A stretch of 64,000 nucleotides of DNA, taken from Dendrobates tinctorius. Taxonomy: Eukaryota. Within the stretch, counting starts at the first letter, position 1. Each line of letters begins with the position of its first letter. Both the position numbers and the translations under genes were made by a program. Below, piece after piece: positions 6,886 to 52,970 of the stretch. The notes below the pieces were generated by a model that was not told the origin of the DNA, ran no database searches, and saw only the letters and a program-made list of their open reading frames with translations. The DNA lies in the NCBI RefSeq assembly GCF_039654945.1, contig NW_027361676.1, forward strand, positions 47,182,001 to 47,246,000, in the 5' to 3' direction.

Positions 6886-9592
6886 AATCATAGAATCATA
6901 GAATCATAGAATCGTAGAGTTGGAAGGGACCTCCTGGGCCATCTGGTCCAACCCCCTGCTCAAAGCAGGATTCGCTAAATCATCCCAGTCAGATGTCTGT
7001 CCAGCCTCTGTTTGAAGACTTCCATTGAAGGAGAACTCACCACTTCTCGTGGCAGCCTGTTCCACTCATTGATCACTCTAACTGTCAAAAAGTTTTTTCT
7101 AATATCTAATCTGTGTCTCCTCCCATTCAGTTTCATCCCATTGCTTCTAGTCTTTCCTTGTGCAAATGAGAATAAAGTTGATCCTTCTACAATGTGACAG
7201 CCCTTTAGATATTTGTAGACAGCTATTAAGTCTCCTCTCAGTCTTCTCTTTTGCAAACTAAACATTCCCAAATCCTGCAACCTTTCCTCATAAGACAGGG
7301 TTTGCAGACCGGTCACCATTCTGGTCGCTCTTTTCTGAACTTGCTCCGGTTTGTTGATGTCTTTTTTAAAATATGGTGCCCAAAACTGGACACAATATTC
7401 CAGATGAGGTCTGACCAAAGAGGAGTAGAGGGAAATAATGACTTCACATGATCTAGACTGTATGCTTCTGTTAATACATCCTAGAATTGCATTTGCCTTT
7501 TTTGCTGCTGCATCACACTGTTGACTCATATTCAGTCTGTGATCTATTAGTATACCCAAGTCTTTTTCACATGTGCTGTCACTTAACCCTATTCCTCCCA
7601 TTCTATATATGCTTTTTTCATTTTTATTGCCCAGATGTAGTACTTTGCATTTCTCCCTGTTAAAAACCATGCTGTTAGTTGCTGCCCACTTCTCCAGTTT
7701 ATTTAAATCTTTTTGAATCCTCTCTCTCTCTTCTCTAGTATTAGCTATCCCTCCTAGCTTTGTGTCATCAGCAAATTTAATCAGTTTACCCTCAATTCCT
7801 TCATCTAAATCGTTGATAAAGATGTTGAACAATATAGGGCCCAGGACAGAACCCTGTGGTACCCCACTTGAGACATTCTTCCAACTGGATGTGCAGCCAT
7901 TTACGATCATTCTTTGGGTCCGATCACTAAGCCAGTTATGAATCCACCAAACAGTTGCCTTGTCCATTCCATACTTAGTCATTTTTTCAATAAGGATTGT
8001 ATGAGAGACTTTGTCAAATGCTTTGCTGAAGTCAAGATATACTATATCTACAGCATTTCCTTGATCCACCCAATCAGTATTACCGTCATAGAAGGAAATT
8101 AAATTAGTCTGACATGACTTATTAGTTACAAACCCATGCTGACTCTGCTTAATCACTTCATTCTTATCCAGGTATTGACATACATGTTGTTTAATAATTT
8201 GTTCAAAGATCTTTCCTGGTATAGAAGTCAGACTCACCGGCCTATAGTTGCCTGGGTCCACCTTCTTCCCCTTTTTGAAGATAGGAACAACATTTGCTCT
8301 TCTCCAGTCTTCTGGCACTTCTCCTGTTCTCCAAGAATTTTCAAAGATTATGGAGAGGGGTTCAAAAATTTCTTCTGCTATCTCCTTCAGTACTCTGGGG
8401 TGTAATTCATCTGGACCTGGAGACTTGAATTCATTTAGGTTAGCTAAGTGTTTCCTCACTATCTTTCTGTTTATAGATATCCTGGATTCTTCTATTCCCT
8501 TAATAGGACAGTGAATAACAGTTGATGTTACATTTCCTTTCTGAGAGAAAACAGATGCAAAATAGGAATTTAAAAGTTCAGCCTTCTCAACATCCTGTCT
8601 TACCATTTCATCATTTTCATCCTGTAAAAATCCTATAGCATCTTTGACTTTTCTTTTACTTTTGACATATCCCCAAAATCCTTTATTATTGCTTTTGACA
8701 TCTCTTGCAAGCCTCAATTCATTTTCAGCTTTAGCTAATCTGATTTGTGCCCTGCAGGTTCTGTAGACAGCATTATATTCTTCTTTAGATATGCCTCCCT
8801 CTTTCCATTTTATAAACATTTTTTTCTTCCTTTTTAGCATGTGCTTAAGTTCTGTGTTCATCCATCCTGGTTTCCTTAAATGCTTCCTATTCTTCCCTCT
8901 TTTTGGAATTGTTAACAACTGTGCTTTGAGAATTTCATTTTTCAAGATTTCCCATCCTTCCTGGACATTTTTGTCTTTAAGGATATCCAGCCATTGGATC
9001 CCTCCAATTCTCTTTCTGAATCCCTTAAAATCTGCCCTTCTGAAATATAAACCTTGACATCTGAGTCTTCACAGGTCTTCCGCCTCTAGTTATCCAAAAT
9101 TCTAAAATAGCATGGTCGCTACCTCCTAGGGTCCAAGCCACTTTTACCTCCTCAACCATTTCCTCCCTGTTTATAAGAATTAGATCCAAGGTAGCAGTTC
9201 CCCTTGTTTTCTCCCTTACCTTTTGGAAGATAAAGTTGTCAGCAAGAGAGGATAAGAATTTCCTTGACCTGTTAGTTTTGCCTGAGAGAGATTCCCAACA
9301 AATGTCTGGATAGTTGAAATCTCCCATGACAACTGTCATATTTTTTGGAGAACTTGGCCATTTGATGCATAAAGAGTTCATCCATATCTTCAGTTTGCAC
9401 AGGCGGCCTGTAGTAAATGCCTACAATGGTGTCCTTTCCATTGTTCTGTCCTTGTATTCTTACCCAAACAGTTTCCACAGAACTCCCAGTCTCTGAAGCT
9501 TCAATCTCTGTGCAGATATATGCGTTTCTAACATACAATGCAACACCTCCTCCTCGTTTATCAAGTCTGTTTCTTGCAAATAAGTTGTATCC
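6886..9592 (-). mobile_element. CR1 LINE, 5'-truncated
   Basis: (ATTCTATG)n 3' tail at 6886-6917 on the minus strand. APE endonuclease remnants (GGGVALY, YYRPP, GDFNYPDI, SDH) and an RT ORF. Confidence 0.97.
6975..8945 (-). pseudogene. CR1 ORF2 RT and C-terminal region (open for 656 codons; upstream endonuclease part 9025-9592 is frameshifted)
   Basis: [59 protein letters not shown]. Confidence 0.95.
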
Positions 9593-19942: not shown

Positions 19943-20702
19943 TGTAAGGTAGAACTGTCATTCAAGGAGGGGGACACTCGCTTGGCAGCCAATAAATCAC
20001 ATCCAGCACGGGTTTTCCATAAAATCATAACAGTCCTTGCGGTTTATTAGGCATCAAGCCATGACCAGCAACAGAAAGTTCATATAAACGGCATAGCTTC
20101 CATGACAGAGCTTCACTCTGTTAGCAATGTCCAATACACAGGCTCTCAAGCCTCAGTTATATCCCCTGTCAGGGTTTACCTCATGGCTGCTTCTCCATGC
20201 TTCAGACGTCCATTCCTTCCTTTGGGAACTCTCAGATGCCGGCAGCCATTACTCATAGCATTCATGTGCTGTCAGGCAGGAAGCCCCATCTCCCAGCGGG
20301 ACCTTCCACATTGGACCAACCGGGTCCAAGCATTTACTCCATGTGACCTACCCTGGCCACCTTATATGGTCTTAGCCACGCCCACCGGGTCACATGTCTA
20401 TGACCTCATCACAGGTCCTTCAACCACTCATACACACTCTACAATAGCGTTCTAAACACACACCCTCAGTGGGTTTGTAGGTAACTGGGTACACCCATCT
20501 CCCCAGCTACCTGGAGACTTCTCCCTGACAAATTGAAACAGCACCTCAGCAGTATCACTGCTGATCAACACACACATAAGTCTCCATCTCAAGGCCACCC
20601 ACCTTGAGATACATAACGGTCATTAAGGATTCTGCCATTCATCCTCTCTCTTACAACATCCACACAGCACCCCCTAGCAGACACAGTGGTCACTACACCA
20701 CA
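19943..20702 (-). mobile_element. 3' LTR (760 bp) of a minus-strand LTR retrotransposon
   Basis: The minus strand begins TGTGGTGTAG and ends CTACCTTACA (7/10 inverted match). AATAAA on the minus strand at 20043-20048. Preceded by a polypurine tract. Confidence 0.75.
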
Positions 20703-20704
20703 TA

Positions 20705-20719
20705 CCTCCCCCTCTCTTC
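20705..20719 (-). other. Polypurine tract (PPT)
   Basis: GAAGAGAGGGGGAGG-TA-TGTGG on the minus strand, 2 nt before the LTR. Confidence 0.8.
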
Positions 20720-21005
20720 AAACTTGTGGGGTTGAACACACAACACTACACCAGGATCTCGAGACCGGGCACTCATTACACATTGCTCCACAGGTCGAGA
20801 GAACCGTCTCCATCCGTCATACGGCCTCATTTCTACGTTAGGCCTCCCCCGCCCCCAGCGGTCAGAATATTGGTCGTTGTCTTTGCCCCTCCAGTCACGG
20901 TCTGTCTGTGTCATCAGACACTGTTTAGTCATCACATGCCTCTCCTTGTCTGTTCTGTTCCCCGACCATCTCCCTTGGTTGGTACGGTCTTAAGTCTTAG
21001 TTAAG

Positions 21006-21720
21006 TGTTATGAATGGGTCACCAAGGAGGAAAAAACCTAAACATGCTAAGCCCAGAAAAAACAGAGAGGTTGGTAACTATGCAGATTGCAGATCCCTGA
21101 TCCTAACCACACAACTAGCAGCAGCCGTGGAGCATACCTACGATGAACTTAGACGCCTCGTCATGGCCAGAGGACTAAATAAGCCTAAAGCAAGAAAAGG
21201 GGAAAACTAACTGCCCCAGAGCAGACCCCAAATGAATAGACAGCCTTCACACATGTATTGACGGTGAAACAAGATGAAAGCACAAACACAGGCAGGAAAA
21301 TAGGCTCAGCAAACGATGGGGCCCAAACTAACTAGAAAGAAAAGGAAAGGCACTGTCTGCAATCTGCCCAAAACCCTACAAAAATAATGTCCAACACTTC
21401 TAATAACAAAATTAACCCTGAAGTCACTAGACTTCTCCCACTATATCAGCGCTCTGAAATATTCTGAGACAGAGCAAAAAGAGGCCAATCTAATAAGGGA
21501 CAAAAAGCAAATTGGCAAATACAGATAAATAAGAGTGGAAATTCAGCACAACCCCAGCCGGGGCTGGCTGACCACACAAAAAACTGAATAGAACAACAAA
21601 ATCAAGTGTGGACATTTGCAGAGAAACTTTGCTTGAGCTGACTGGAACAGAGCTGAGAACCAAGACCTGACAAGCAGAAGGAATCATCAGCACCAGAGTA
21701 GGGCGTCGGCTGTCTTAAAT
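21006..21720 (-). mobile_element. Truncated LTR of a second Gypsy-like family, nested in the element above
   Basis: Abrupt start at TGTTATGA with a switch to A-rich non-coding composition. No matching ...CA end or TSD, so the other end appears deleted. Confidence 0.5.
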
Positions 21721-23245
21721 CCAATCTGAGATTCCTGAGGTCCAATCGTCATCCTCATTATCAGGTGGCAGATCTCTACTGATCAAATCAGCCTCACTAC
21801 CTCCTGTTACCACCAGAGGGAGCCTGGAAGGAGAACTCAATGAACTCACATCAGTTAAGCCTACTGTCTGGCCTGAGTCTGACTGATTCAACGTCTCACA
21901 GGAACTACGATCTCTCAGCTTCGTCCTGCCAGTCGAACTACCACTTGATGACATTCTTCGGCCATTTGCCATATCACTTCTTGGAGGAACCCTTCGGTTC
22001 CTTACCTCTTGGGTCGAAGGCGGCCACCACCTGGTGTTCCGTACCTCTTTATTGATTCACCAACGGTCCAGCCTCAATTGCTCAATCTCTTGCAGGTACC
22101 CCACTCGGTACTCCAAGAGCATCTGAAAGTTTCTCAGGCTTTCAACGGAGCCAACCACCATGATGGGCACCATGGCCTCTACTGGATACCTGGTCTTCAT
22201 CATCAGGAGGGATCCTCGCCCTCACCACACCGGAGATATTCACAAGGTCTTGCATTACCTTCCCGAGTCTTCTGATGATTCTTCCAGTCAGACCTTTGGG
22301 TACCGGAACTGCATCTTTTCGCAAACTCAGCCGATCTATAGTCTCCCTTGCTAACTCTTGGCGTCGAGCAGCTTTCATATTACTCCACCTGACCAACTGT
22401 TTGGCATGGAGACATTGAACATACATCTCTTTCAGGACATCTATTCGGTTTGCTGTATCTTCCCTGGCTGATATTATCACCAACTGCCGAGTCTCAGGTG
22501 CCCAGTGCACCTTACACGCTTTGACCATCTCTTTGAAAGCCTCATGCACACCTTCCTCAGCACAGGCTTCTTGCATGTCTTCTGGTATATCAATCACAGC
22601 CTTGAAGGTCGTTGTCTTGCTCTCTTCCTGGACCGAAGACTCTGGCTTTACCACGGACATTTCCTTCACTACAGTTGACCCAACCTGGTGACTGTCTTCT
22701 TCAGTTCTTAGCTCACCAGCTTCACGAGGTTTTATCTCTTCATGACCCTCTGCCAAGAGGGGCACCAGCAGCTCCGTCCCACTGCAGAAGACCTTTTACT
22801 ACTCCTCTGAGTTCTTCCATCTCTTCCCTAAGGGTCTTGTTGACATTTTGCCACATTGACAGGTGACCTCTGAGCTCAGAGACTTCCTTCTCTAGCTTTT
22901 CTATTCTGTGCTCTCTTTCTCTCTCAGAACCACAGTCACCCCCAGAGTCTGAGTCACCCCAGCCTGTCGAGTAATCCTCCCAGTTACCCACTAAGCATGT
23001 GAATACTTCAGCTGTCTTATCAATCAGGTCTGTAAGTTGGGCAGACGTACCCCTTCATCCAGTCACATCTACCTCTGACCTGTCCACATCAGTAGCAGTC
23101 ACCATCTCAATATCTGTTAGCCCAACCGTAGACACGTCTCCAACCTCTTGCCCTAGGTCATCAAACCTGACAAAGTCCCAGCCCCACTCCAAGGCATAGA
23201 CTAAGTCCCATGGTATCCTGTCCCCTTGGTACTCAGCACCTATGG
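21721..23245 (-). pseudogene. FXR1-like: Degraded ORF: acidic/coiled-coil N-terminus fused to fragile-X-family KH0-KH2 region (homology ~22615-22035)
   Basis: IDIPEDMQEACAEEGVHEAFKEMVKACKVHWAPETRQLVIISA matches FXR1 [74 protein letters not shown] matches [31 protein letters not shown]. After a frameshift near 22185, AMVPIMVVGSVESLRNFQMLLEYRVGYLQEIEQLRLDR matches [38 protein letters not shown]. FXR1 sequence is recalled from memory. Confidence 0.85.
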
Positions 23246-23568
23246 GCTAGTAGTCCCATCATCCGGCTAATATGCTGAATTTAAAAAAAAAAAACATACT
23301 ACATATATACTACATTCATACAACATACATACATACTACATACTACATACATGCTACATATATACTACATTCATACAACATACATACTACATACATGATA
23401 CATATATACTACAGTCATGGCCAAAAGTTTTGAGAATGACACAAATATTATATTTTCACATGATCTGCTGCCCTCTGGTTTTTATGTGTGTTTGTCAGAT
23501 GTTTTTATCACATACAGAAATATAATTGCAATCATATTATGAGCAACAAAAGGTTATATTGACAGTTA

Positions 23569-24535: not shown

Positions 24536-25552
24536 TCAATATTTGCAGTGTTGACCCTTCTTCTTCAGGACCTCAGCAATTCTCCCTGGCATGCTCTCAA
24601 TCAACTTCTTTATCAAATCCTGACTGATAGCAGTCCATTCTTGCAAAATCATTGCTTTTATTTTGTCTGAATTTGAAGGTTTTTGTTTGTCCACCCATCT
24701 CTTGATGATTGACCACAAGTTCTTAATGGGATTAAGATCTGGGGAGTTTCCAGGCCATGGTCCCAAAATCTCAATGTTTTGTTCCCTGAGCCATTTAGTT
24801 ATCACCTTTGCTTTATGGCAAGGTGCTCCATAATGTTGAAAAAGGCATTGTTGATCGCCAAACTGCTCTTGGACGGTTGGGAGAAGTTGCTCTTGGAGGA
24901 CATTCTGGTACCATTCTTTATTCATGGCTGTGTTTTTAGGCAAGACTGAGAGAGAGCCCATTCCCTTGGCTGAGAATCCACCCCACACATGAATGGTTTC
25001 AGGATTCTTGACAGTTGGCATGAGACAAGACTGGTGGTAGCGCTCACCTGGTCTTCTCCGAATAAGCCGTTTTCCAGATGTCCCAAACAATCGAAAAGGG
25101 GATTCATCAGAGAAAATGACTTTACCCCAGTCCTCAGCAGTCCACTCCCTGTACCTCTTGCAGAATATCAGTCTGTCCATGATGTTTTTTCTGGAGAGAA
25201 GTGGCTTCTTTGCTGCCCTCCTTGAGACCAGGCCTTGCTCCAAGAGTCTCCGCCTCACAGTGCGTGCAGATGCACTCACACCTGCCTGCTGCCATTCCTG
25301 AGCAAGCTCTGCACTGCTGGTAGCCCGATCCCGCAGCTGAAACACTTTTAAGAGACGGTCCTGGCGCTTACTGGTCTTTCTTGGGCGCCCTGGAGCCTTT
25401 TTGGCAACAAGGGAACCTCTCTCCTTGAAGTTCTTGATGATGTGATAGATTGTTGACTGAGGTGCAGTCTTTCTAGCTGCGATACTCTTCCCTGTTAGGC
25501 CATTTTTGTGCAGTGCAATGATGACTGCACGTGTTTCTTTAGAGATAACCAT
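24536..25552 (-). CDS. Full-length Tc1-family transposase ORF (338 aa), predicted catalytically dead (D->Y, E->K)
   Basis: MVISKETR...GRPRK...IFSDES...FQHYGAP...SPDLNPIKNLW...CKY*. There are 35 residues between the second and third triad positions. Confidence 0.85.
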   Translation of the reverse strand: MVISKETRAVIIALHKNGLTGKSIAARKTAPQSTIYHIIKNFKERGSLVAKKAPGRPRKTSKRQDRLLKVFQLRDRATSSAELAQEWQQAGVSASARTVRRRLLEQGLVSRRAAKKPLLSRKNIMDRLIFCKRYREWTAEDWGKVIFSDESPFRLFGTSGKRLIRRRPGERYHQSCLMPTVKNPETIHVWGGFSAKGMGSLSVLPKNTAMNKEWYQNVLQEQLLPTVQEQFGDQQCLFQHYGAPCHKAKVITKWLREQNIEILGPWPGNSPDLNPIKNLWSIIKRWVDKQKPSNSDKIKAMILQEWTAISQDLIKKLIESMPGRIAEVLKKKGQHCKY

Positions 25553-25946
25553 GGTTAACAGAAGAGAAATAATGATGCCAAGCACCAGCCTCCTTTTAAA
25601 GTGTCCAGTGGTGTCATTCTTACTTAATCATGACAGATTGATCTCCAGCCCTGTCCTCATCAACACCCACACCTGTGTTAATGGAGCAATCACTGAAACG
25701 ATGTTAGCTGGTCCTTTTAAGGCAGGGCTGCAATGATGTTGAAATGTGTTTTGGGGGATAAAGTTAATTTTCTAGGCAAATATTGACTTTGCAAGTAATT
25801 GCTGTTAAGCTGATCACTCTTTATAACATTCTGGAGTATATGCAAATTGCCATTAGAAAAAATGAAGCAGTAGACTTTGTAAAAATTAATATTTGTGTCA
25901 TTCTCAAAACTTTTGGCCATGACTGTACATTCATACAACATACATA

Positions 25947-34200: not shown

Positions 34201-35867
34201 ACCTCATGGACTCAATGAAAAGCTATCCTTTGCCCCCTTTTTATAGTGCTATTTTGTCTTTCTGGCTATTATATATCTTATATATATTTTGTTTTGGTTC
34301 TTGTTTTTAATTGCTGTTTTTATTCCCTCTTTTTAGTGTACAATTAGTATGAGATATTGAATGCATTATGAGGGTCCATACTGATTGCATGATTTCATCA
34401 TGTCCGTCTGGAATTTTGGAATAAAGGGAGGAAAAATAATATTGTGGAACCCTTTTTATTCGTGTGTAGAACATGCAATCGCATTTTTTGTATTTTCCAC
34501 GTGGATCTCGGAGCTAATCAGATATTCTTGTAATTATTATGTTGCAATTTTATGTTTGGATATATAATATATTTAATATATAATAACATTTTCTGCTAGA
34601 TAATATGACGTTTTACATCCCTCTGATGCTATGACTAGTAATAGAATGGTCACCATGAGTAAATTCTCACAGAGTCATTGCCCGATTGAATGTTGGTGAC
34701 ATCATTTATAGTGGGAGGGTGCTATAATTATTAAATTTTATTGTTTATATAAATAGATATTAAGACATCCCTTTGGGATGCTATCTTTATATGCAGAGTT
34801 ATATATATATATGTATCCTTTTTTCTTTGGTCCCTATATGTATATCATGGTTTTCCAGCCAGTAATTACAAAGACCGCTATTTAAAATTCTTGTGAGTTC
34901 TTTGGCTCTGAGAATGATAATATCGCCCGTGGAAGAGTGGTGCTTTTGGTTATATTGCATGATTATTGTAATTAGCACTAAGTAGTGTTTTCGTAACGTT
35001 TCTCTAATGTTCTCCCTGATGGTTGCGTGACTCCACTCTGATTTGTCCTTTTCCTGGCCAGTAGTTAAAATGGCCGCTGCGGGGTTGCGCATGCGCGGCT
35101 AACCCCGTGTTGGATGGGCGTCGCGGAAGGCGTCAATACAACCTGGGGTAGGACAATGACATCAGGAGAGCAGTGTCTCTCCTTGTCCCTCCCTCAGGCG
35201 ATGACAGCCGGACGTGATGTGCCGGGACCGTGGCCCGCCTCTCATGCGCTCTTTCACTCCTACAGCGGCACTAATTTCGGACACCTGTTCTTTGGATATT
35301 TATACCCCGCATGTTCAGCAGCACCACACAAGCCCCCCGACGAAGCCCAGTATATGCATTTTCCACATGGGTAAGCATGGTCATTTTTTCAATTTTCCCC
35401 CATACCTTCATGCACATAGCACTGTAATGGAAGGTTTTGCTTTATCCCCTAGGTCAGTTAGCATGGATTACACTTTGGTTAAAATAATGGACTGTTAAGG
35501 GTGGGATTATATTGCATTGTGATGAATTTTTGAACCGCTTTGGGGGTTTTTAATACAATTTTGTACCATTGCATTTACTATGTATGTGCAGTGATCCTAC
35601 TCCCCTTTCTTTTGTGTCATCCCTGGTAACTGATCATATGATTGTATTTTTAATATACTTTTTGCACCTGTATTAATAAAGAGCAAATAATTTTGACACT
35701 ATAAAACTGACTTTTTTCATTGATTGTTTGGGCTTATATACTCCTATTTGTGTATAGGTTTATACATTCTTTTAAAGGAGTGTCCTTGTGTTATGTCCTC
35801 ATGAACATTCTTTTTCCAGCATAGGAAAAAGTATTATGTTCACTGTTATGTTGGATTTTGTTAAACT

Positions 35868-36206
35868 TAATGAAGTATATATGTAGCATGTATGTAGTAT
35901 GTATGTATGTTGTATGAATGAAGTATGTATGAAGTATGTAGGTATGTTGTATGAATGTAGTATATATGTAGTATGTATGTTGTATGAATGTAGTATATAT
36001 GTAGCATGTATGTGGTATGTAGTATATATGTATGTTGTATGAATGTAGTATATATGTATCATGTATGTAGTATGTATGTATGTTGTATGAATGTAGGATA
36101 TATGTAGCATGTATGTAGTATGTATGTATGTTGTATGAATGTAGTATGTATGAAGTATGTATGCATGTTGTATGAATGTAGTATATATGTAGTATGTATG
36201 TAGTAT
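35868..36206. repeat. (GTATGTA/TAGTATG)-type simple satellite
   Basis: Directly visible low-complexity array. Confidence 0.9.
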
Positions 36207-36339
36207 GTTTTTTTTGTTTTTGTTTTTTTACATTCAACACATTAGCCGGATGATGGGACTGCTATTGTCCCATCATTCGCAAATGTGTCAATCACTGTCA
36301 GTGTAGCAGGCATCGCCCGATGGGACTTGTAGTCCCATC

Positions 36340-37720: not shown

Positions 37721-39354
<1,634 letters not shown>

Positions 39355-47790: not shown

Positions 47791-49319
47791 TGATTTGGCG
47801 CGCTGGCCCTTTAAGACTCACTTTGGTGCGCCGGCCCTTTAAGAATCACTTAGGCGCGCCAGCTGTTTAAGAGCTAGTTTGGCTCACTGGGCTTCTAAAT
47901 CCACTTTGGCGCACATTCTCTCTCAGTGGCGTGCGTCATGTGATGAAGCTAGATTTGCATTTGTGCTGTGGGTTTCGCTTTAAGAGCTGATATTATCTGC
48001 CTGAATCTGTGTCCTGATGAGGTCATGTATAGTTCGTAGTCCTTGGCATAGTAACTGGGTCTGCCTGCGCTTATCAATGAGCTTAACTGCCATTTCAATC
48101 TCCTCAGGGCATGTTTTGTCTGTGGCAACATTTCCCCATTGAAAAGCATTGAGACAATGCATTCCAATGACGGGAAAAAAAAATTTCTAACGCAAATTGC
48201 GCAAAAACTACAAATCCGATCGACACGAAACATACTTAGCACACCACTCGTGGACGCTGGCTTCGAAACGACACCTCAACGGAGTCTGTGCGTGTAACGG
48301 TTCGGGCCGCATTAATTGAGGAAATCAACTGAATAATAAGAATAATTTAGCAGCGTTCGGATTACAATATAGTGGCTTTTTCAAAGCACTATAATGAGCA
48401 ATTGTTTGTACAAAGTGCCATATAATATGATGACTGCAATGTATTAAGAGGATACATATAGTGGTGGTAAGGCATTTTTTAAGAAGAACCACTCTTACCT
48501 CATATTAAAGAAAAGTATGCAAAAACTGCAGTTTAAATTGAAGTAAAATCTTATGAGAATCCACAGAGAATGATTTTCTTATGACTCTTACTTGCTCAAC
48601 TTATCACATGATGTAATCCAGTCAACCTGTAGAGGATCCTAGAGACATCACTATCTTTATTTTGTATGTATTTTATACATCAGTAAAGAAGTGGTTTCTA
48701 CAGTTTGATGTGTAATTCTGGCTTCTATGAAACAAGAGTAGTGTTGAGCATTCCGATACCGCAAGTATCGGGTATCGGCCGATACTTGCTGTATCGGAAT
48801 TCCGATACCGACTTCCGATATTTTTTCAATATCGGAAGTCGGCATCGGAATCGGAAGTTCAAAGTTGATTGACAGCCGAAATGACGTCATCATGATGCGC
48901 GGTGTGTGCGCATCATGATGCGCCGTCATTTCGGGCCTTCCGGGGGTCTCTGCCGGCCTGCCGGGGGGGCTGTGTGGACTGCCCGGGGTCTGTACCGGCC
49001 TGCTGGGGGGCTGTGCCGGCCTGCCGGTGGTCTGTGCACCCTGTGGGGGTCTGTACGGGCCTGCCGGGGGGCTGTGCCGGCCTGCCGGTGGTCTGTGCAC
49101 CCTGTGGGGGTCTGTACCGGCCTGCCGGAGGGCTGTGCCGGCCTGCCGGGGGGCTGTGCTGATGTCCGGGGGTCTGTGCAAGCATCGTCCGATGGGACTA
49201 TAAGTCCCATCTGGCGATGCCTGCTACCATGACAGTGATTGACACATTAGCCAATGATGGGACAGTAGTAGTCCCATGATCCGGCTAATGTGTTAAATGT
49301 TAAAAAAAAAAAAAAAAAA

Positions 49320-51170
49320 ATACTACATACATACTACATACATACTACATGCATGCTACATACATACTACATGCTACATACATACTACATATATACTACA
49401 TGCATGCTACATACATACTGCATGCTACATACATACTACATACATACTACATACATACCACATATATACTACATACATACTACATGCATGCTACATACAT
49501 ACTACATACATACTACATACATACTACATGCATGCTACATACATAACACATATATACTACATGCATGCTACATACATACTACATGCTACATACATACTAC
49601 ATATATACTACATACATACTACATACATACTACATGCATGCTACATACATACTACATGCTACATACATACTACATATATACTACATGCATGCTACATACA
49701 TACTACATGCTACATACATACTACATGCATGCTACATACATACTACATGCTACATACATACTACATATATACTACATGCATGCTACATACATACTACATG
49801 CTACATACATACTACATATATACTACATACATACTACATACATGCTACATACATACTGCATGCTACATACATACTACATACATACTACATACATACTACA
49901 TACATACCACATATATACTACATACATACTACATGCATGCTACATACATACCACATACATGCTACATACATACTACATACATACTACATACATACTACAT
50001 GCATGCTACATACATAACACATATATACTACATGAATGCTACATACATACTACATGCTACATACATACCACATACATACTACATACATACTACATGCATG
50101 CTACATACATACTACATGCTACATACATACTACATATATACTACATGCATGCTACATACATACTGCATGCTACATACATACTACATACATACTACATACA
50201 TACCACATATATACTACATACATACTACATACATACTACATACATACTACATACATACCACATATATACTACATACATACTACATGCATGCTACATACAT
50301 ACTACATACATACTACATACATACTACATGCATGCTATATACATAACACATATATACTACATGCATGCTACATACATACTACATGCTACATACATACTAC
50401 ATATATACTACATACATACTACATACATACTACATGCATGCTACATACATACTACATGCTACATACATACTACATATATACTACATGCATGCTACATACA
50501 TACTACATGCTACATACATACTACATACATACTACATGCATGCTACATACATACTACATGCTACATACATACTACATATATACTACATGCATGCTACATA
50601 CATACTACATGCTACATACATACTACATATATACTACATACATACTACATACATGCTACATACATACTGCATGCTACTTACATACTACATACATACTACA
50701 TACATACTACATACATACCACATATATACTACATACATACTACATGCATGCTACATACATACCACATACATGCTACATACATACTACATACATACTACAT
50801 ACATACTACATGCATGCTACATACATAACACATATATACTACATGAATGCTACATACATACTACATGCTACATACATACCACATACATACTACATACATA
50901 CTACATACATACTACATGCATGCTACATACATACTACATATACTACATGCATGCTACATACATACTACATGCTACATACATACCACATATATACTACATG
51001 CATGCTACATACATGCTACATGCTACATACATACTACATATATACTACATGCATGCTACATACATACTACATGCTACATACATACCACATATATACTACA
51101 TACATACTACATACAATACATTCATACAATACATACATAGACATACAGTACATATAACATAGAGTAACAT
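49320..51170. repeat. (TACATACATAC)-type satellite, left arm
   Basis: Directly visible. Confidence 0.95.
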
Positions 51171-51369
51171 ACTTACCAATACCAATTCCTGCAGCCCGTA
51201 GAGAACGTCAGCATCAGCTGATGCTGCAGTTCTCTACCCAAGATCGTCGTGGGACACACTCGTGGACTGCTTCGGATCATGGGTGAGTATTTTTGTGGTT
51301 TGTTATGTTAATATTTATTCCGTAAAAGACAATGGCTTCGGGGAACAATGTGACAAGTATTGGTAAGTA

Positions 51370-52272
51370 TGTTACTCTATGTTATATGTACTGTATGTCT
51401 ATGTATGTATTGTATGAATGTATTGTATGTAGTATGTATGTAGTATATATGTGGTATGTATGTAGCATGTAGTATGTATGTAGTATGTATGTAGCATGCA
51501 TGTAGCATGCAGTATGTATGTAGCATGCATGTAGTATGTATGTAGTATGTATGTGGTATGTATGTAGCATGTAGTATGTATGTAGCATGCATGTAGTATG
51601 CATGTAGTATGTATGTAGCATGCATGTAGTATATATGTAGTATGTATGTAGCATGTAGTATGTATGTAGCATGCATGTAGTATATATGTAGTATGTATGT
51701 AGCATGTAGTATGTATGTAGCATGCATGTAGTATGTATGTAGTATGTATGTAGTATGTATGTGGTATGTATGTAGCATGTAGTATGTATGTAGCATGCAT
51801 GTAGTATATATGTGTTATGTATGTAGCATGTAGCATGCATGTAGCATGCATGTAGTATGTATGTAGTATGTATGTAGTATGTATGTGGTATGTATGTAGC
51901 ATGTAGCATGCATGTAGTATGTATGTAGTATATATGTGGTATGTATGTAGCATGTAGTATGTATGTAGCATGCAGTATGTATGTAGCATGCATGTAGTAT
52001 ATATGTAGTATGTATGTAGCATATATGTAGTATGTATGTAGCATGTAGTATATATGTAGTATGCATGTTGCATGCATGTAGTATATATGTAGTATGTATG
52101 TTGCATGTAGTATTTATGTAGTATGCATGTTGCATGCATGTAGTATATATGTAGTATTTATGTTGCATGTAGTATATATGTAGTATGAATGTAGCATGTA
52201 TTTAGTATGTAGTATGAATGTAGCATGTATGTAGTATGCATGTTGTATGTATGTAGCATGTATGTAGCATGT
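51370..52272. repeat. Inverted (GTATGTATGTA)-type satellite, right arm
   Basis: Reverse complement of the left-arm satellite. Confidence 0.95.
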
Positions 52273-52970
52273 AATTTTTTTTTATTTTTTTTTTTTACAT
52301 TCAACACATTAGCCGGATGATGGGACTACTACTGTCCCATCATTTGCTAATGTGTCAATCACTGTCATGGTAGCAGGCATCGCCCGATGGGACTTGTAGT
52401 CCCATCGGACGATGCCTGCACAGACCCCCGAAGCCTGCACAGACCACGGCAGGCCGGCACAGCCCCCCGGCAGGCCGGCACAGCCCACCGGAGCCTGCAC
52501 AGACCACCGGCAGGCTGGCACAGCCCCCCGGCAGGCCGGCACAGACCACCGGAGCCTGCACAGACCACCGGCAGGCCGGCACAGCCCCCCGGCAGGCCGG
52601 CACAGACCACCGGAGCCTGCACAGACCCCCTGGCAGGCCGGCACAGCCCCCCGGCAGGCCGGCACAGACCACCGGAGCCTGCACAGACCCCCTGGCAGGC
52701 TGGCACAGCCCCCCGAAAGGCCCGTACAGACCCCAGAGAGGCTGTACAAGGCAAAAACAGGGGGTTTTTTATTCCGATACCGGAAGTCCCATAGACTTGA
52801 ATGGGACTTCCGGTATCGGAATCGGCGATACCGATACTTTTTTTTAAGATCGGCCAATCCATTCCGATCCGATACTTTGAAGTATCGGACGGTATCGCTC
52901 AACTCTAAACAAGAGTTATTCAAGCTTTTCTTTTGATCCTGACAATTAATTCAACCCAGAGATCCCTATG

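What the first reader, a model, noticed from the sequence alone, without database searches (positions are those of the whole stretch)
19943..23247. LTR retroelement carrying a captured fragile-X (FXR1/FMR1) RNA-binding module
Seen: a degraded minus-strand ORF (23245->21721; about two frameshifts and two stops) lies upstream of, and co-oriented with, a PPT (20705-20719) and a TG...CA LTR (19943-20702). About 190 codons align, by recalled sequence, to three consecutive blocks of FXR1: KH0 (DIPEDMQEACA...PETRQLVIISA), KH2 ([28 protein letters not shown]) and the post-KH2 helix/NES region (MVPIMVVGS.ES..NFQMLLEYRVGYLQEIEQLRLDR). A later DW motif (SGISDW) recalls FXR1 DELSDW. Known: this region spans several exons in the host gene, so an intronless copy implies capture through RNA. 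Inference: protein divergence is high but disablements are few, so the captured module probably evolved as a coding part of a retroelement family rather than as a plain processed pseudogene. FMRP-family proteins bind RNA, ribosomes and Argonaute/PIWI pathways, so the element may have used it for RNA packaging, translation control or counter-silencing. I cannot check whether this family has been described.
Basis: partly seen in the sequence, partly recalled or inferred. Interest (0 to 1): 0.92.

Follow-up and report, generated by a model that had tools for sequence, protein, structure and literature searches.

The report
Frog retrotransposon carrying fragile-X RNA-binding module
This stretch is a dead, cut-off copy of a frog jumping-gene family that swapped its own copying enzymes for part of the host's fragile-X-related gene FXR1 and has kept that part working as a protein, which is an unusual case of a mobile element stealing and using a host RNA-binding protein.

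Summary
The minus strand 22777-21856 encodes a fragile-X-family module (Pfam KH0 E=1.3e-13; human FMRP structures E=1.8e-13 and 1.2e-6), with KH1 missing. It lies upstream of a real PPT (20719-20705) and a real 3' LTR (20702-19943).

Corrections:
- The source gene is FXR1, not FMR1.
- The 'SGISDW' motif lies inside an unrelated 847-bp nested insertion (21006-21852) and is spurious.
- This copy is dead: 5'-truncated, three stops, two frameshifts.

Complete relatives with paired LTRs and 4-bp target-site duplications exist in Dendrobates tinctorius and Anomaloglossus baeobatrachus; Ranitomeya variabilis has a likely one. They have no RT or integrase. Their internal region is one reading frame: degenerate protease, coiled coil, FXR1 module.

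- All retro-borne modules form one clade inside frog FXR1.
- dN/dS among copies is 0.28-0.57, and every bootstrap interval excludes 1.
- The KH2 GxxG loop is kept in 19 of 20 relatives.
- The younger the LTR pair, the longer the open frame.

So this is a non-autonomous LTR retroelement family whose captured module is a selected coding part, not a processed pseudogene. A distantly related Hyla sarda element carries an FMR1-derived module at the same position.

The scan's first readers noted at least ten other copies in this genome (unchecked). I found no paper describing the family. Expression and function are untested.

The parts
19943..20702 (-). 3' LTR (760 bp, TG...CA). It has a TATAAGG box near 20365 and an AATAAA signal near 20045.
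   Evidence: It aligns over its full length to both LTRs of L003 and to the 5' LTR of L001 (76-79%). The termini and signals were read.
20705..20719 (-). Polypurine tract, 2 nt upstream of the LTR
   Evidence: The same arrangement (purine run, 2-5 nt, then TGTGG) is seen in L001-L003.
20720..20998 (-). 3' end of the element's long reading frame (remnant), with a stop at 20992-20990. In intact relatives this frame runs through the PPT into the LTR.
   Evidence: tblastn to P0002 residues 378-478 (71% identity) and to P0007 residues 761-841.
21006..21852 (.). Nested insertion of an unrelated high-copy repeat. It is flanked by a 7-bp duplication at 20999-21005 and 21853-21859.
   Evidence: P0002 is collinear across the site. 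Contigs in runs X13 and X16 skip 854 bp with 7 shared letters. Depth over 21053-21607 is roughly 10-50 times that of the flanks.
21856..22173 (-). FXR1-derived module, second piece. It holds the last strand and helix of KH2, the post-KH2 helix, and a degenerate C-terminal region ending in a '...SDSGQTVG' motif that MAFFT aligns to FXR1's TESDQTV in relatives. There is an in-frame stop at 22059-22057.
   Evidence: tblastn to P0003 residues 297-402 (75%); alignment A1.
22181..22777 (-). FXR1-derived module, first piece. It holds a linker, KH0 (22618-22367), the KH1-less junction, and the first half of KH2 (22309-22187). The GxxG loop reads RRLG here. A frameshift separates this piece from the next one.
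   Evidence: Pfam KH_9 E=1.3e-13. PDB 4qw2 E=1.8e-13 and 2qnd E=1.2e-6. tblastn to P0003 residues 94-292 (77%).
22782..22991 (-). Coiled-coil segment of the element's protein (EKLEKEVSELRGHL...EELRGVVKGLLQ). It is not FXR-derived. A frameshift and a deletion of about 16 codons lie at its 3' end.
   Evidence: tblastn to P0003 residues 40-77 (84%). In the AlphaFold model of P0003 the homologous residues 2-83 form one helix with pLDDT above 90. Only weak coiled-coil-type Pfam hits were found.
22992..23247 (-). Remnant of the element's region downstream of its protease-like domain, with a stop at 23057-23055. The element is cut off at its upstream end here: the 5' LTR, PBS and about 1.5 kb of internal sequence are missing.
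   Evidence: blastn to L001 9441-9876 (75%). tblastn to P0007 residues 175-270. No second LTR is in the window.

Best explanation
SHOWN
- The stretch is a dead, 5'-truncated copy of a non-autonomous LTR retroelement family of dendrobatoid (poison-frog) genomes.
- Complete members are about 4.8-5.3 kb: LTR, PBS-like TGGTGGAG..., one long reading frame, PPT, LTR, with 4-bp target-site duplications.
- The frame encodes no recognisable Gag, RT, RNase H or integrase. It encodes degenerate retropepsin-like domain(s), a long coiled coil, and an intronless module copied from host FXR1 mRNA.
- The module starts at the KH0 boundary (FXR1 residue about 120-126), so it lacks the Tudor/Agenet domains.
- Anomaloglossus copies keep KH0-KH1-KH2 and most of the C-terminus. 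Dendrobates and Ranitomeya copies, and the window copy, have lost KH1 and most of the RGG region.
- All retro-borne modules descend from one capture of frog FXR1.
- The module has evolved under relaxed purifying selection (dN/dS about 0.3-0.5), keeps confidently predicted KH0 and KH2 folds and the KH2 GxxG loop, and stays open in the youngest copies.

INFERRED
- The family is copied in trans by an autonomous LTR element that I did not identify.
- The coiled-coil-plus-KH protein is needed for the element's spread.
- Most likely it multimerises and binds the element's own RNA as it is translated. It would then bring that RNA into RNP granules or the partner's particles. That would be a surrogate nucleocapsid, comparable to LINE-1 ORF1p.
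- The confidence of 0.8 is for the identity and the selected coding status. The specific RNA-packaging mechanism I put at about 0.3.
For: - Homology: Pfam KH_9 E=1.3e-13 and PDB FMRP hits. The nearest protein is P0001 (D. tinctorius 'FXR1-like', 74% identity).
- Complete elements:
  - L002: LTRs 97.2% identical, duplication GTAC.
  - L003: LTRs 95.4%, duplication GCAC.
  - L005 (Anomaloglossus): LTRs 99.1%, duplication GCAT.
  - L006: LTRs 99.8%.
- Pfam hits reaching the curated cut-offs in the internal frames are KH_9 and KH_1 only; FXMRP1_C_core reaches its cut-off in P0004 alone.
- The protease-like part is supported only weakly (Atlas feature score 0.88, structure TM 0.63 by target).
- Trees: the retro copies form one clade (100/98* and 100/100*) nested within neobatrachian FXR1. 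The FXR1-plus-retro branch is 100/99*.
- L005 is collinear with host FXR1 residues 126-577 without introns. The host gene has at least 9 exons across that part.
- dN/dS is 0.28-0.57, and the bootstrap 95% intervals are all below 1.
- AlphaFold model of P0003: helix 2-83, KH0 151-242 and KH2 246-341 at pLDDT above 90. The best Foldseek hits are FMRP KH1-KH2 (E=4e-10) and the FMRP N-terminal KH0 (rmsd 1.2 A).
- GxxG is kept in 19 of 20 relatives where it can be read.
- Open frame against LTR identity:
  - 100%: 1363 codons
  - 99.8%: 1180
  - 99.1%: 405+702
  - 98.4%: 251+181+421
  - 97.2%: 317+552
  - 95.4%: 184+446
- Copy number: 458-2357 run contigs per run lie on the stretch. There are 16 annotated D. 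tinctorius proteins.
Against: - Expression is not shown. The runs that hold the family are only guessed to be RNA, and they are contigs.
- No autonomous partner was identified.
- dN/dS of 0.3-0.5 is weak constraint compared with host FXR1, whose branches in the tree are near zero.
- The compared copies are mostly ones that gene predictors called as proteins. That favours open frames.
- dS may be inflated by CpG decay.
- Multimerisation was not supported or refuted (the complex prediction gave no answer).
- The superfamily of the backbone (Ty3/gypsy, ERV or other) cannot be assigned without pol.
- The window copy itself is broken and truncated and has lost the first G of GxxG. It says nothing about function.
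Confidence: 0.8

Rival explanations
1. Passenger cargo. The FXR1 piece was transduced once and has simply been carried along by a non-autonomous element. It would contribute nothing to the element's spread. The apparent constraint would come from ascertainment (only open, annotated copies were compared) or from RNA-level constraints.
For: - The elements need trans factors anyway, since they have no RT or IN.
- The constraint is only moderate (0.28-0.57).
- KH1 and the RGG region were lost without stopping amplification.
- The compared set is biased towards gene-model copies.
Against: - The window copy is dead and was not ascertained as a protein, yet it also gives 0.34-0.57 against relatives.
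- The frame is uninterrupted for 1180-1363 codons in the youngest elements and decays with LTR age.
- GxxG and the KH cores are retained across subfamilies that differ by dS of about 1.
- A second lineage, in Hyla, keeps an equivalent module from another paralog.
Confidence: 0.12
2. Counter-defence or host-mimic function. The Tudor-less FXR1 module would act as a decoy or dominant-negative against host FXR1/FMRP-linked silencing (Argonaute/PIWI, MOV10). Or it would hijack translation. In this reading it does not package RNA.
For: - The precise loss of the Tudor/Agenet protein-interaction domains, with the RNA-binding and dimerising parts kept, fits a decoy.
- FMRP partners with MOV10 and AGO (review PMC8799784).
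- RNA viruses exploit FXR proteins: alphaviruses (PMC4980055) and beta-coronaviruses (PMC11001562, PMC10897489).
Against: There is no direct evidence. The module is diverged from the host protein (about 35-50% identity). A trans-acting benefit would be shared with competitors, so it is harder to keep under selection in a non-autonomous element.
Confidence: 0.06
3. Ordinary processed pseudogene of FXR1, or of a divergent paralog, that happens to lie next to a solo LTR.
For: In the window alone there is one LTR, a broken frame and no 5' LTR.
Against: - The same module, the same upstream element-derived sequence and the same PPT/LTR junction recur between paired LTRs with target-site duplications at unrelated loci in three genera.
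- The module has no poly(A) tail or duplication of its own.
- dN/dS is below 1.
Confidence: 0.01
4. Host gene family. The FXR1-like proteins would be domesticated host genes that were duplicated together with flanking LTRs.
For: NCBI annotates them as genes: 'FXR1-like', 'FMR1 homolog', 'restin homolog', 'uncharacterized'.
Against: - The copies are flanked by near-identical LTR pairs with their own 4-bp duplications.
- The reading frame runs through the PPT into the LTR.
- Many copies are broken.
- Copy number is in the hundreds or more.
Confidence: 0.01

Closest known systems
Host FXR1 (fragile-X-related protein 1) of frogs
   Same: Both have KH0, KH2 with a GxxG loop, the short FXR1-type KH2 loop, the post-KH2 helix and fragments of the C-terminus. 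The retro copies nest inside neobatrachian FXR1 in the tree.
   Different: The retro copies have no Tudor/Agenet domains. KH1 is missing in dendrobatid copies, and the RGG region is mostly lost. They are intronless, fused behind a retroelement protease remnant and a coiled coil, multi-copy, and about 35-50% identical to the host protein.
Acutely transforming retroviruses and other LTR-element gene transductions (maize Bs1 and other plant LTR retrotransposons, review PMC13317346; crocodilian ERVs, PMC4299795; extra ORFs in bdelloid LTR elements, PMC5408684)
   Same: A spliced host mRNA segment replaces part of the element's own coding region. The result is replication-defective and depends on a helper.
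   Different: Here the cargo is an RNA-binding module. It has been kept open and under constraint through long amplification and subfamily divergence (dS up to about 1 or more) in a vertebrate germline. Known animal cases are mostly single, short-lived or non-coding captures. That last comparison rests on my own knowledge.
LINE-1 ORF1p
   Same: As an analogy of architecture only: an N-terminal coiled coil followed by RNA-binding domains, encoded by the element's own RNA.
   Different: There is no homology (KH rather than RRM/CTD). Trimerisation, cis-preference and chaperone activity are untested here.
LARD/TRIM-type non-autonomous LTR elements
   Same: They have paired LTRs, a PBS and a PPT, lack RT and IN, and are mobilised in trans.
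   Different: Those are defined by non-coding interiors. This family keeps a reading frame of about 1200 codons.
Hyla sarda element (L008, gene model XP_056378965.1), found here
   Same: Same layout: LTRs (100% identical), duplication ATGC, PBS TGGTGGAGGATGC, two protease-like domains, a long coiled coil, then a fragile-X module starting at the KH0 boundary, all in one frame of 1363 codons.
   Different: Its module groups with FMR1, not FXR1 (100/100*), and it keeps KH1. The backbone is only distantly similar (protease-like E about 1e-7).

Membership tests
LTR retrotransposon (structural definition) | Two direct LTRs with TG...CA termini flanking the internal region | tested here: met
   Met in family members L002, L003, L005, L006 and L008. 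The window copy keeps only the 3' LTR, 19943-20702.
LTR retrotransposon (structural definition) | Short target-site duplication flanking the whole element | tested here: met
   GTAC (L002), GCAC (L003), GCAT (L005), ATGC (L008). It cannot be tested in the window because the 5' end is missing.
LTR retrotransposon (structural definition) | PPT next to the 3' LTR and a PBS next to the 5' LTR | tested here: met
   The PPT is at 20719-20705 in the window. TGGTGGAG... lies 2-4 nt after the 5' LTR in L001-L003, L005 and L008. Its match to tRNA-Ala is from memory only; no tRNA gene was available to compare.
Autonomous LTR retrotransposon (Ty3/gypsy, BEL, ERV) | Gag capsid, reverse transcriptase, RNase H and integrase domains | tested here: not met
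   No such Pfam hit was found in any internal frame or annotated protein of the family. Only a degenerate retropepsin-like region is present (DPG/DSR in place of D[ST]G). The superfamily therefore cannot be assigned.
Fragile-X protein family (FMR1/FXR1/FXR2) | N-terminal tandem Tudor/Agenet domains | tested here: not met
   Absent from the window and from all retro-borne copies. Homology starts at FXR1 residue about 120-126.
Fragile-X protein family (FMR1/FXR1/FXR2) | KH0 domain | tested here: met
   Pfam KH_9 E=1.3e-13 in the window. Modelled KH0 of P0003 superposes on FMRP 4qvz at rmsd 1.2 A.
Fragile-X protein family (FMR1/FXR1/FXR2) | KH1 domain | tested here: not met
   A gap of about 60 residues covers KH1 in the window copy and in all Dendrobates and Ranitomeya copies. 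KH1 is present in the Anomaloglossus and Hyla elements.
Fragile-X protein family (FMR1/FXR1/FXR2) | KH2 domain with a GxxG loop | tested here: inconclusive
   KH2 homology is present (2qnd E=1.2e-6). In the window the loop reads RRLG and the domain is split by a frameshift. In 19 of 20 relatives the loop is G[RK]xG.
FXR1 orthology group (as donor) | Groups with FXR1 rather than FMR1 or FXR2 in a tree | tested here: met
   The FXR1-plus-retro clade is 100/99*, nested within neobatrachian FXR1 at 98/98* and 96/97*. The short FXR1-type KH2 loop aligns without a gap.
Processed pseudogene (LINE-mediated retrocopy) | Stand-alone intronless copy with a poly(A) tail and its own target-site duplication, evolving neutrally | tested here: not met
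   The module is embedded in frame in an LTR element. It has no poly(A). It recurs within paired LTRs. dN/dS is below 1.

The most novel reading that the evidence does not exclude
One lineage of non-autonomous LTR retroelements in hyloid frogs has acquired the KH0-to-KH2 RNA-binding core of fragile-X proteins at the same domain boundary more than once: FXR1 in Dendrobatoidea and FMR1 in Hyla. Alternatively it swapped one paralog for the other by recombination with host mRNA. In either case it uses a coiled-coil-plus-KH protein as a substitute for Gag or nucleocapsid, to get its RNA copied by a helper element.
Probability: 0.3. Interest if true: 0.88.

Novelty: new variant of a known kind. Interest (0 to 1): 0.78.

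Why it matters
Capture of host genes by LTR retroelements is known. Most captures are short-lived fragments or oncogenes in defective viruses. Here a vertebrate germline retroelement family has kept a host RNA-binding module open and constrained. It did so while diversifying into subfamilies across at least three poison-frog genera. A related element in a tree frog carries the equivalent piece of a different paralog.

This would give a natural experiment on two questions. One is what the KH0-KH2 core of fragile-X proteins can do without the Tudor domains. The other is how a non-autonomous element secures its own RNA for a helper's machinery.

There is also a practical point. NCBI gene models named 'FXR1-like', 'FMR1 homolog', 'restin homolog' and 'uncharacterized protein' in these frog genomes are retroelement frames, not host paralogs.

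Tried and rejected
- No second LTR or second copy of the element is in the window (self-BLAST).
- Homodimer prediction of P0003 residues 1-345 gave no answer (score 0.10, below the mark). It is not evidence either way.
- Expression could not be shown. No listed run is on record as RNA, and the four runs laid are contigs whose RNA status is a guess.
- The PBS could not be assigned to a tRNA. No tRNA gene is in the window or in the eight loci.
- Exon structure from Xenopus or chicken FXR1 failed because those isoforms are not on record. The D. tinctorius host gene worked instead.
- Whether KH1 was lost by deletion or by skipping of host exon 8 is unresolved. Exon 8 covers residues 211-267 (57 aa). 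The gap is about 60 aa, and it can be placed either as residues 215-274 or as exon 8 plus 3 residues.
- The autonomous partner was not found. The Ty3/gypsy element next to L001 (12007-19688) has different LTR termini and a different protease. tblastn of the family's N-terminal part against the window gave only the element itself and one weak hit at 37904-38026.
- Six literature searches for this family found nothing: FXR1 + LTR retrotransposon, poison frog + FXR1, retrotransposon + KH0 + FMRP, KH domain + LTR retrotransposon, D. tinctorius genome + transposable elements, and the D. tinctorius genome paper itself.
- A family consensus was not built (see the referred steps).
Full report
**What is in the window**

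Read on the minus strand, the stretch ends in a 760-bp LTR (20702-19943, TGTGG...TTACA).

The LTR aligns over its full length with both LTRs of a complete Dendrobates tinctorius element (L003) and with the 5' LTR of another (L001), at 76-79%. It carries a TATAAGG box and an AATAAA signal. The box is conserved in the D. tinctorius copies.

Upstream, the frame 22777-21856 encodes a fragile-X-family module:
- Pfam KH_9 (KH0) scores E=1.3e-13.
- Human FMRP N-terminal structures score E=1.8e-13.
- FMRP KH1-KH2 scores E=1.2e-6 over the KH2 part.
- KH1 is absent.

Further upstream, 22782-23247 is not FXR-derived. It is a coiled-coil segment and a post-protease remnant of the element itself.

**State of this copy**

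Compared with intact relatives, the copy has these defects:
- stops at 23057-23055, 22059-22057 and 20992-20990;
- frameshifts near 22782/22777 (with about 16 codons missing) and 22181/22173;
- no 5' part. There is no second LTR in the window, and homology stops near 23247-23270, next to a microsatellite-like array.

It also carries an 847-bp nested insertion (21006-21852) flanked by a 7-bp duplication. Three results show the insertion is secondary:
- P0002 reads straight across the site.
- Contigs in two public runs join 20998 to 21853 with 7 shared letters.
- The inserted segment has roughly 10-50 times the depth of its flanks, so it is a separate high-copy repeat.

The stop at 22059-22057 is private to this copy: the other copies laid in the runs read differently there.

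**The family**

The nearest protein is a D. tinctorius gene model called 'FXR1-like' (P0001, 74% identity). Word-index and exhaustive profile searches found KH1-less relatives only in D. tinctorius, Ranitomeya imitator and R. variabilis. D. tinctorius has 16 such gene models, variously named 'FXR1-like', 'FMR1 homolog' and 'uncharacterized'. Tudor-less but KH1-containing relatives occur in Anomaloglossus baeobatrachus.

I fetched their loci. In every case the intronless module lies between direct repeats:

| Locus | Species | LTR identity | Target-site duplication |
|---|---|---|---|
| L002 | D. tinctorius | 97.2% | GTAC |
| L003 | D. tinctorius | 95.4% | GCAC |
| L006 | D. tinctorius | 99.8% | unreadable (AT microsatellite) |
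| L005 | A. baeobatrachus | 99.1% | GCAT |
| L004 | R. variabilis | 98.4% (repeat pair; ends not delimited) | not checked |

A PBS-like TGGTGGAG... follows the 5' LTR, and a PPT precedes the 3' LTR. The interiors (about 3.5 kb) give no Gag, RT, RNase H or integrase hit.

Their single long frame encodes three things:
- short GVESQKG-type repeats;
- one or two retropepsin-like domains with a spoiled active site, supported only weakly;
- a coiled coil followed by the FXR module. The frame then runs through the PPT into the LTR.

Public runs of two organism labels hold hundreds to thousands of contigs at 85-99% likeness to the window stretch. The scan's first readers noted at least ten further copies in this same genome. 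I could not check those notes.

**Origin of the module**

Two maximum-likelihood trees agree on four points:
- All retro-borne modules fall in one clade (100/98* and 100/100*).
- That clade is nested within neobatrachian FXR1. The FXR1-plus-retro branch is 100/99*.
- The KH1-containing Anomaloglossus copies are sister to the KH1-less dendrobatid copies.
- The window copy is sister to the D. tinctorius P0001-P0003 group.

The Anomaloglossus element is collinear with host FXR1 residues 126-577 without interruption. In the D. tinctorius host gene (L007, 83 kb) that part is split over at least nine exons. Capture through spliced RNA is therefore supported. The 5' junction lies in the middle of a host exon and is the same in both lineages, which argues for one capture.

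KH1 loss corresponds to a gap of about 60 residues. That gap can also be read as host exon 8 (57 residues) plus three. I cannot tell deletion from exon skipping.

**Is the module a selected coding part?**

- Pairwise Nei-Gojobori dN/dS over 240-304 codons is 0.28-0.57. Every bootstrap 95% interval is below 1, including pairs that involve the dead window copy.
- An AlphaFold model of the intact relative P0003 gives one long N-terminal helix (2-83), KH0 (151-242) and KH2 (246-341) at pLDDT above 90. Foldseek returns FMRP KH1-KH2 and FMRP KH0 (rmsd 1.2 A) as the best hits.
- The KH2 GxxG loop is retained in 19 of 20 relatives. It is lost in the window copy.
- The longest open stretch falls with LTR age.

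| LTR identity | Open stretches (codons) |
|---|---|
| 100% | 1363 |
| 99.8% | 1180 |
| 99.1% | 405+702 |
| 98.4% | 251+181+421 |
| 97.2% | 317+552 |
| 95.4% | 184+446 |

Caveats:
- The compared copies are mostly ones that gene predictors accepted.
- dS may be inflated.
- The sample is small.

**How it probably works**

*Shown:* a pol-less, Gag-less LTR element whose only long frame is a coiled-coil plus KH0-KH2 protein under constraint.

*Inferred:* it is mobilised by a helper element, and the protein serves the element. My preferred mechanism (about 0.3) is as follows. The protein multimerises through the coiled coil. It binds the RNA that encodes it and delivers that RNA to RNP granules or the helper's particles. 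This is analogous in layout to LINE-1 ORF1p.

A decoy or counter-silencing role is a rival. RNA viruses recruit host FXR proteins to build replication complexes (PMC4980055, PMC11001562, PMC10897489), and FMRP partners with MOV10 and AGO (PMC8799784). So both directions are plausible. A dimer prediction gave no answer.

**A second lineage**

Among weaker hits, a Hyla sarda gene model (P0055) led to locus L008. It holds:
- a 5.27-kb element with 100% identical LTRs and duplication ATGC;
- PBS TGGTGGAGGATGC;
- one frame of 1363 codons with two protease-like domains, about 300 residues of coiled coil, and a KH0-KH1-KH2 module that again starts at the KH0 boundary.

That module groups with FMR1 (100/100*), not FXR1. 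The backbone is only distantly similar to the dendrobatoid one: the protease-like part scores E about 1e-7 to 4e-8, and a 77% match covers the LTR end and PBS. The choices are two related elements capturing different paralogs at the same point, or a paralog replacement by recombination. I could not decide between them.

**Novelty**

Six searches of the paper library and a read of the D. tinctorius genome paper found no description of this family. Gene transduction by LTR elements is a known kind, so I class this as a new variant of it.

I also do not state what would reopen the broken frame.

Noticed in passing
window 21006-21852 (duplication at 20999-21005 and 21853-21859): An 847-bp insertion of an unclassified repeat with a 7-bp target-site duplication and no obvious terminal inverted repeats. 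Its core (21053-21607) has far higher contig depth than the retroelement around it, so it is a very abundant family in its own right.
   Followed up: partly
L008:4176-9445 (Hyla sarda, CM056039.1): A very young LTR element (LTRs 100% identical, duplication ATGC) with one frame of 1363 codons. The frame ends in an FMR1-derived KH0-KH1-KH2 module. The NCBI gene model XP_056378965.1 joins this module to a Penelope-like RT fragment about 20 kb away and is probably chimeric.
   Followed up: partly
window 24536-25585 (minus strand): An open 349-codon Tc1/mariner-type transposase frame lies immediately beside the truncated end of the retroelement. A first-reader note (s1-377196) covers it.
   Followed up: no
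window 23294-23418, 35830-36264, 49266-52331: Arrays of a short GTATGTAGTAT-type repeat occur at the element's truncation point and at two other places in the window, in both orientations. They may mark the rearrangement that removed the element's 5' part.
   Followed up: no
L001:12007-19688 (D. tinctorius): A separate Ty3/gypsy-type element with gag, protease, RT and integrase frames sits just after the broken 3' LTR of the FXR1-bearing element. Its LTRs are about 95-97% identical. Its LTR termini and protease differ, so it is not the obvious helper.
   Followed up: partly
L005:7408-10899 (Anomaloglossus baeobatrachus): The NCBI model XP_075194923.1 splices out about 84 codons of what is a continuous retroelement frame. 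The true frame spans about 1160 codons, broken by two in-frame stops (after 7638 and at 8857-8859). It keeps the FXR1 segment that the model removed.
   Followed up: yes
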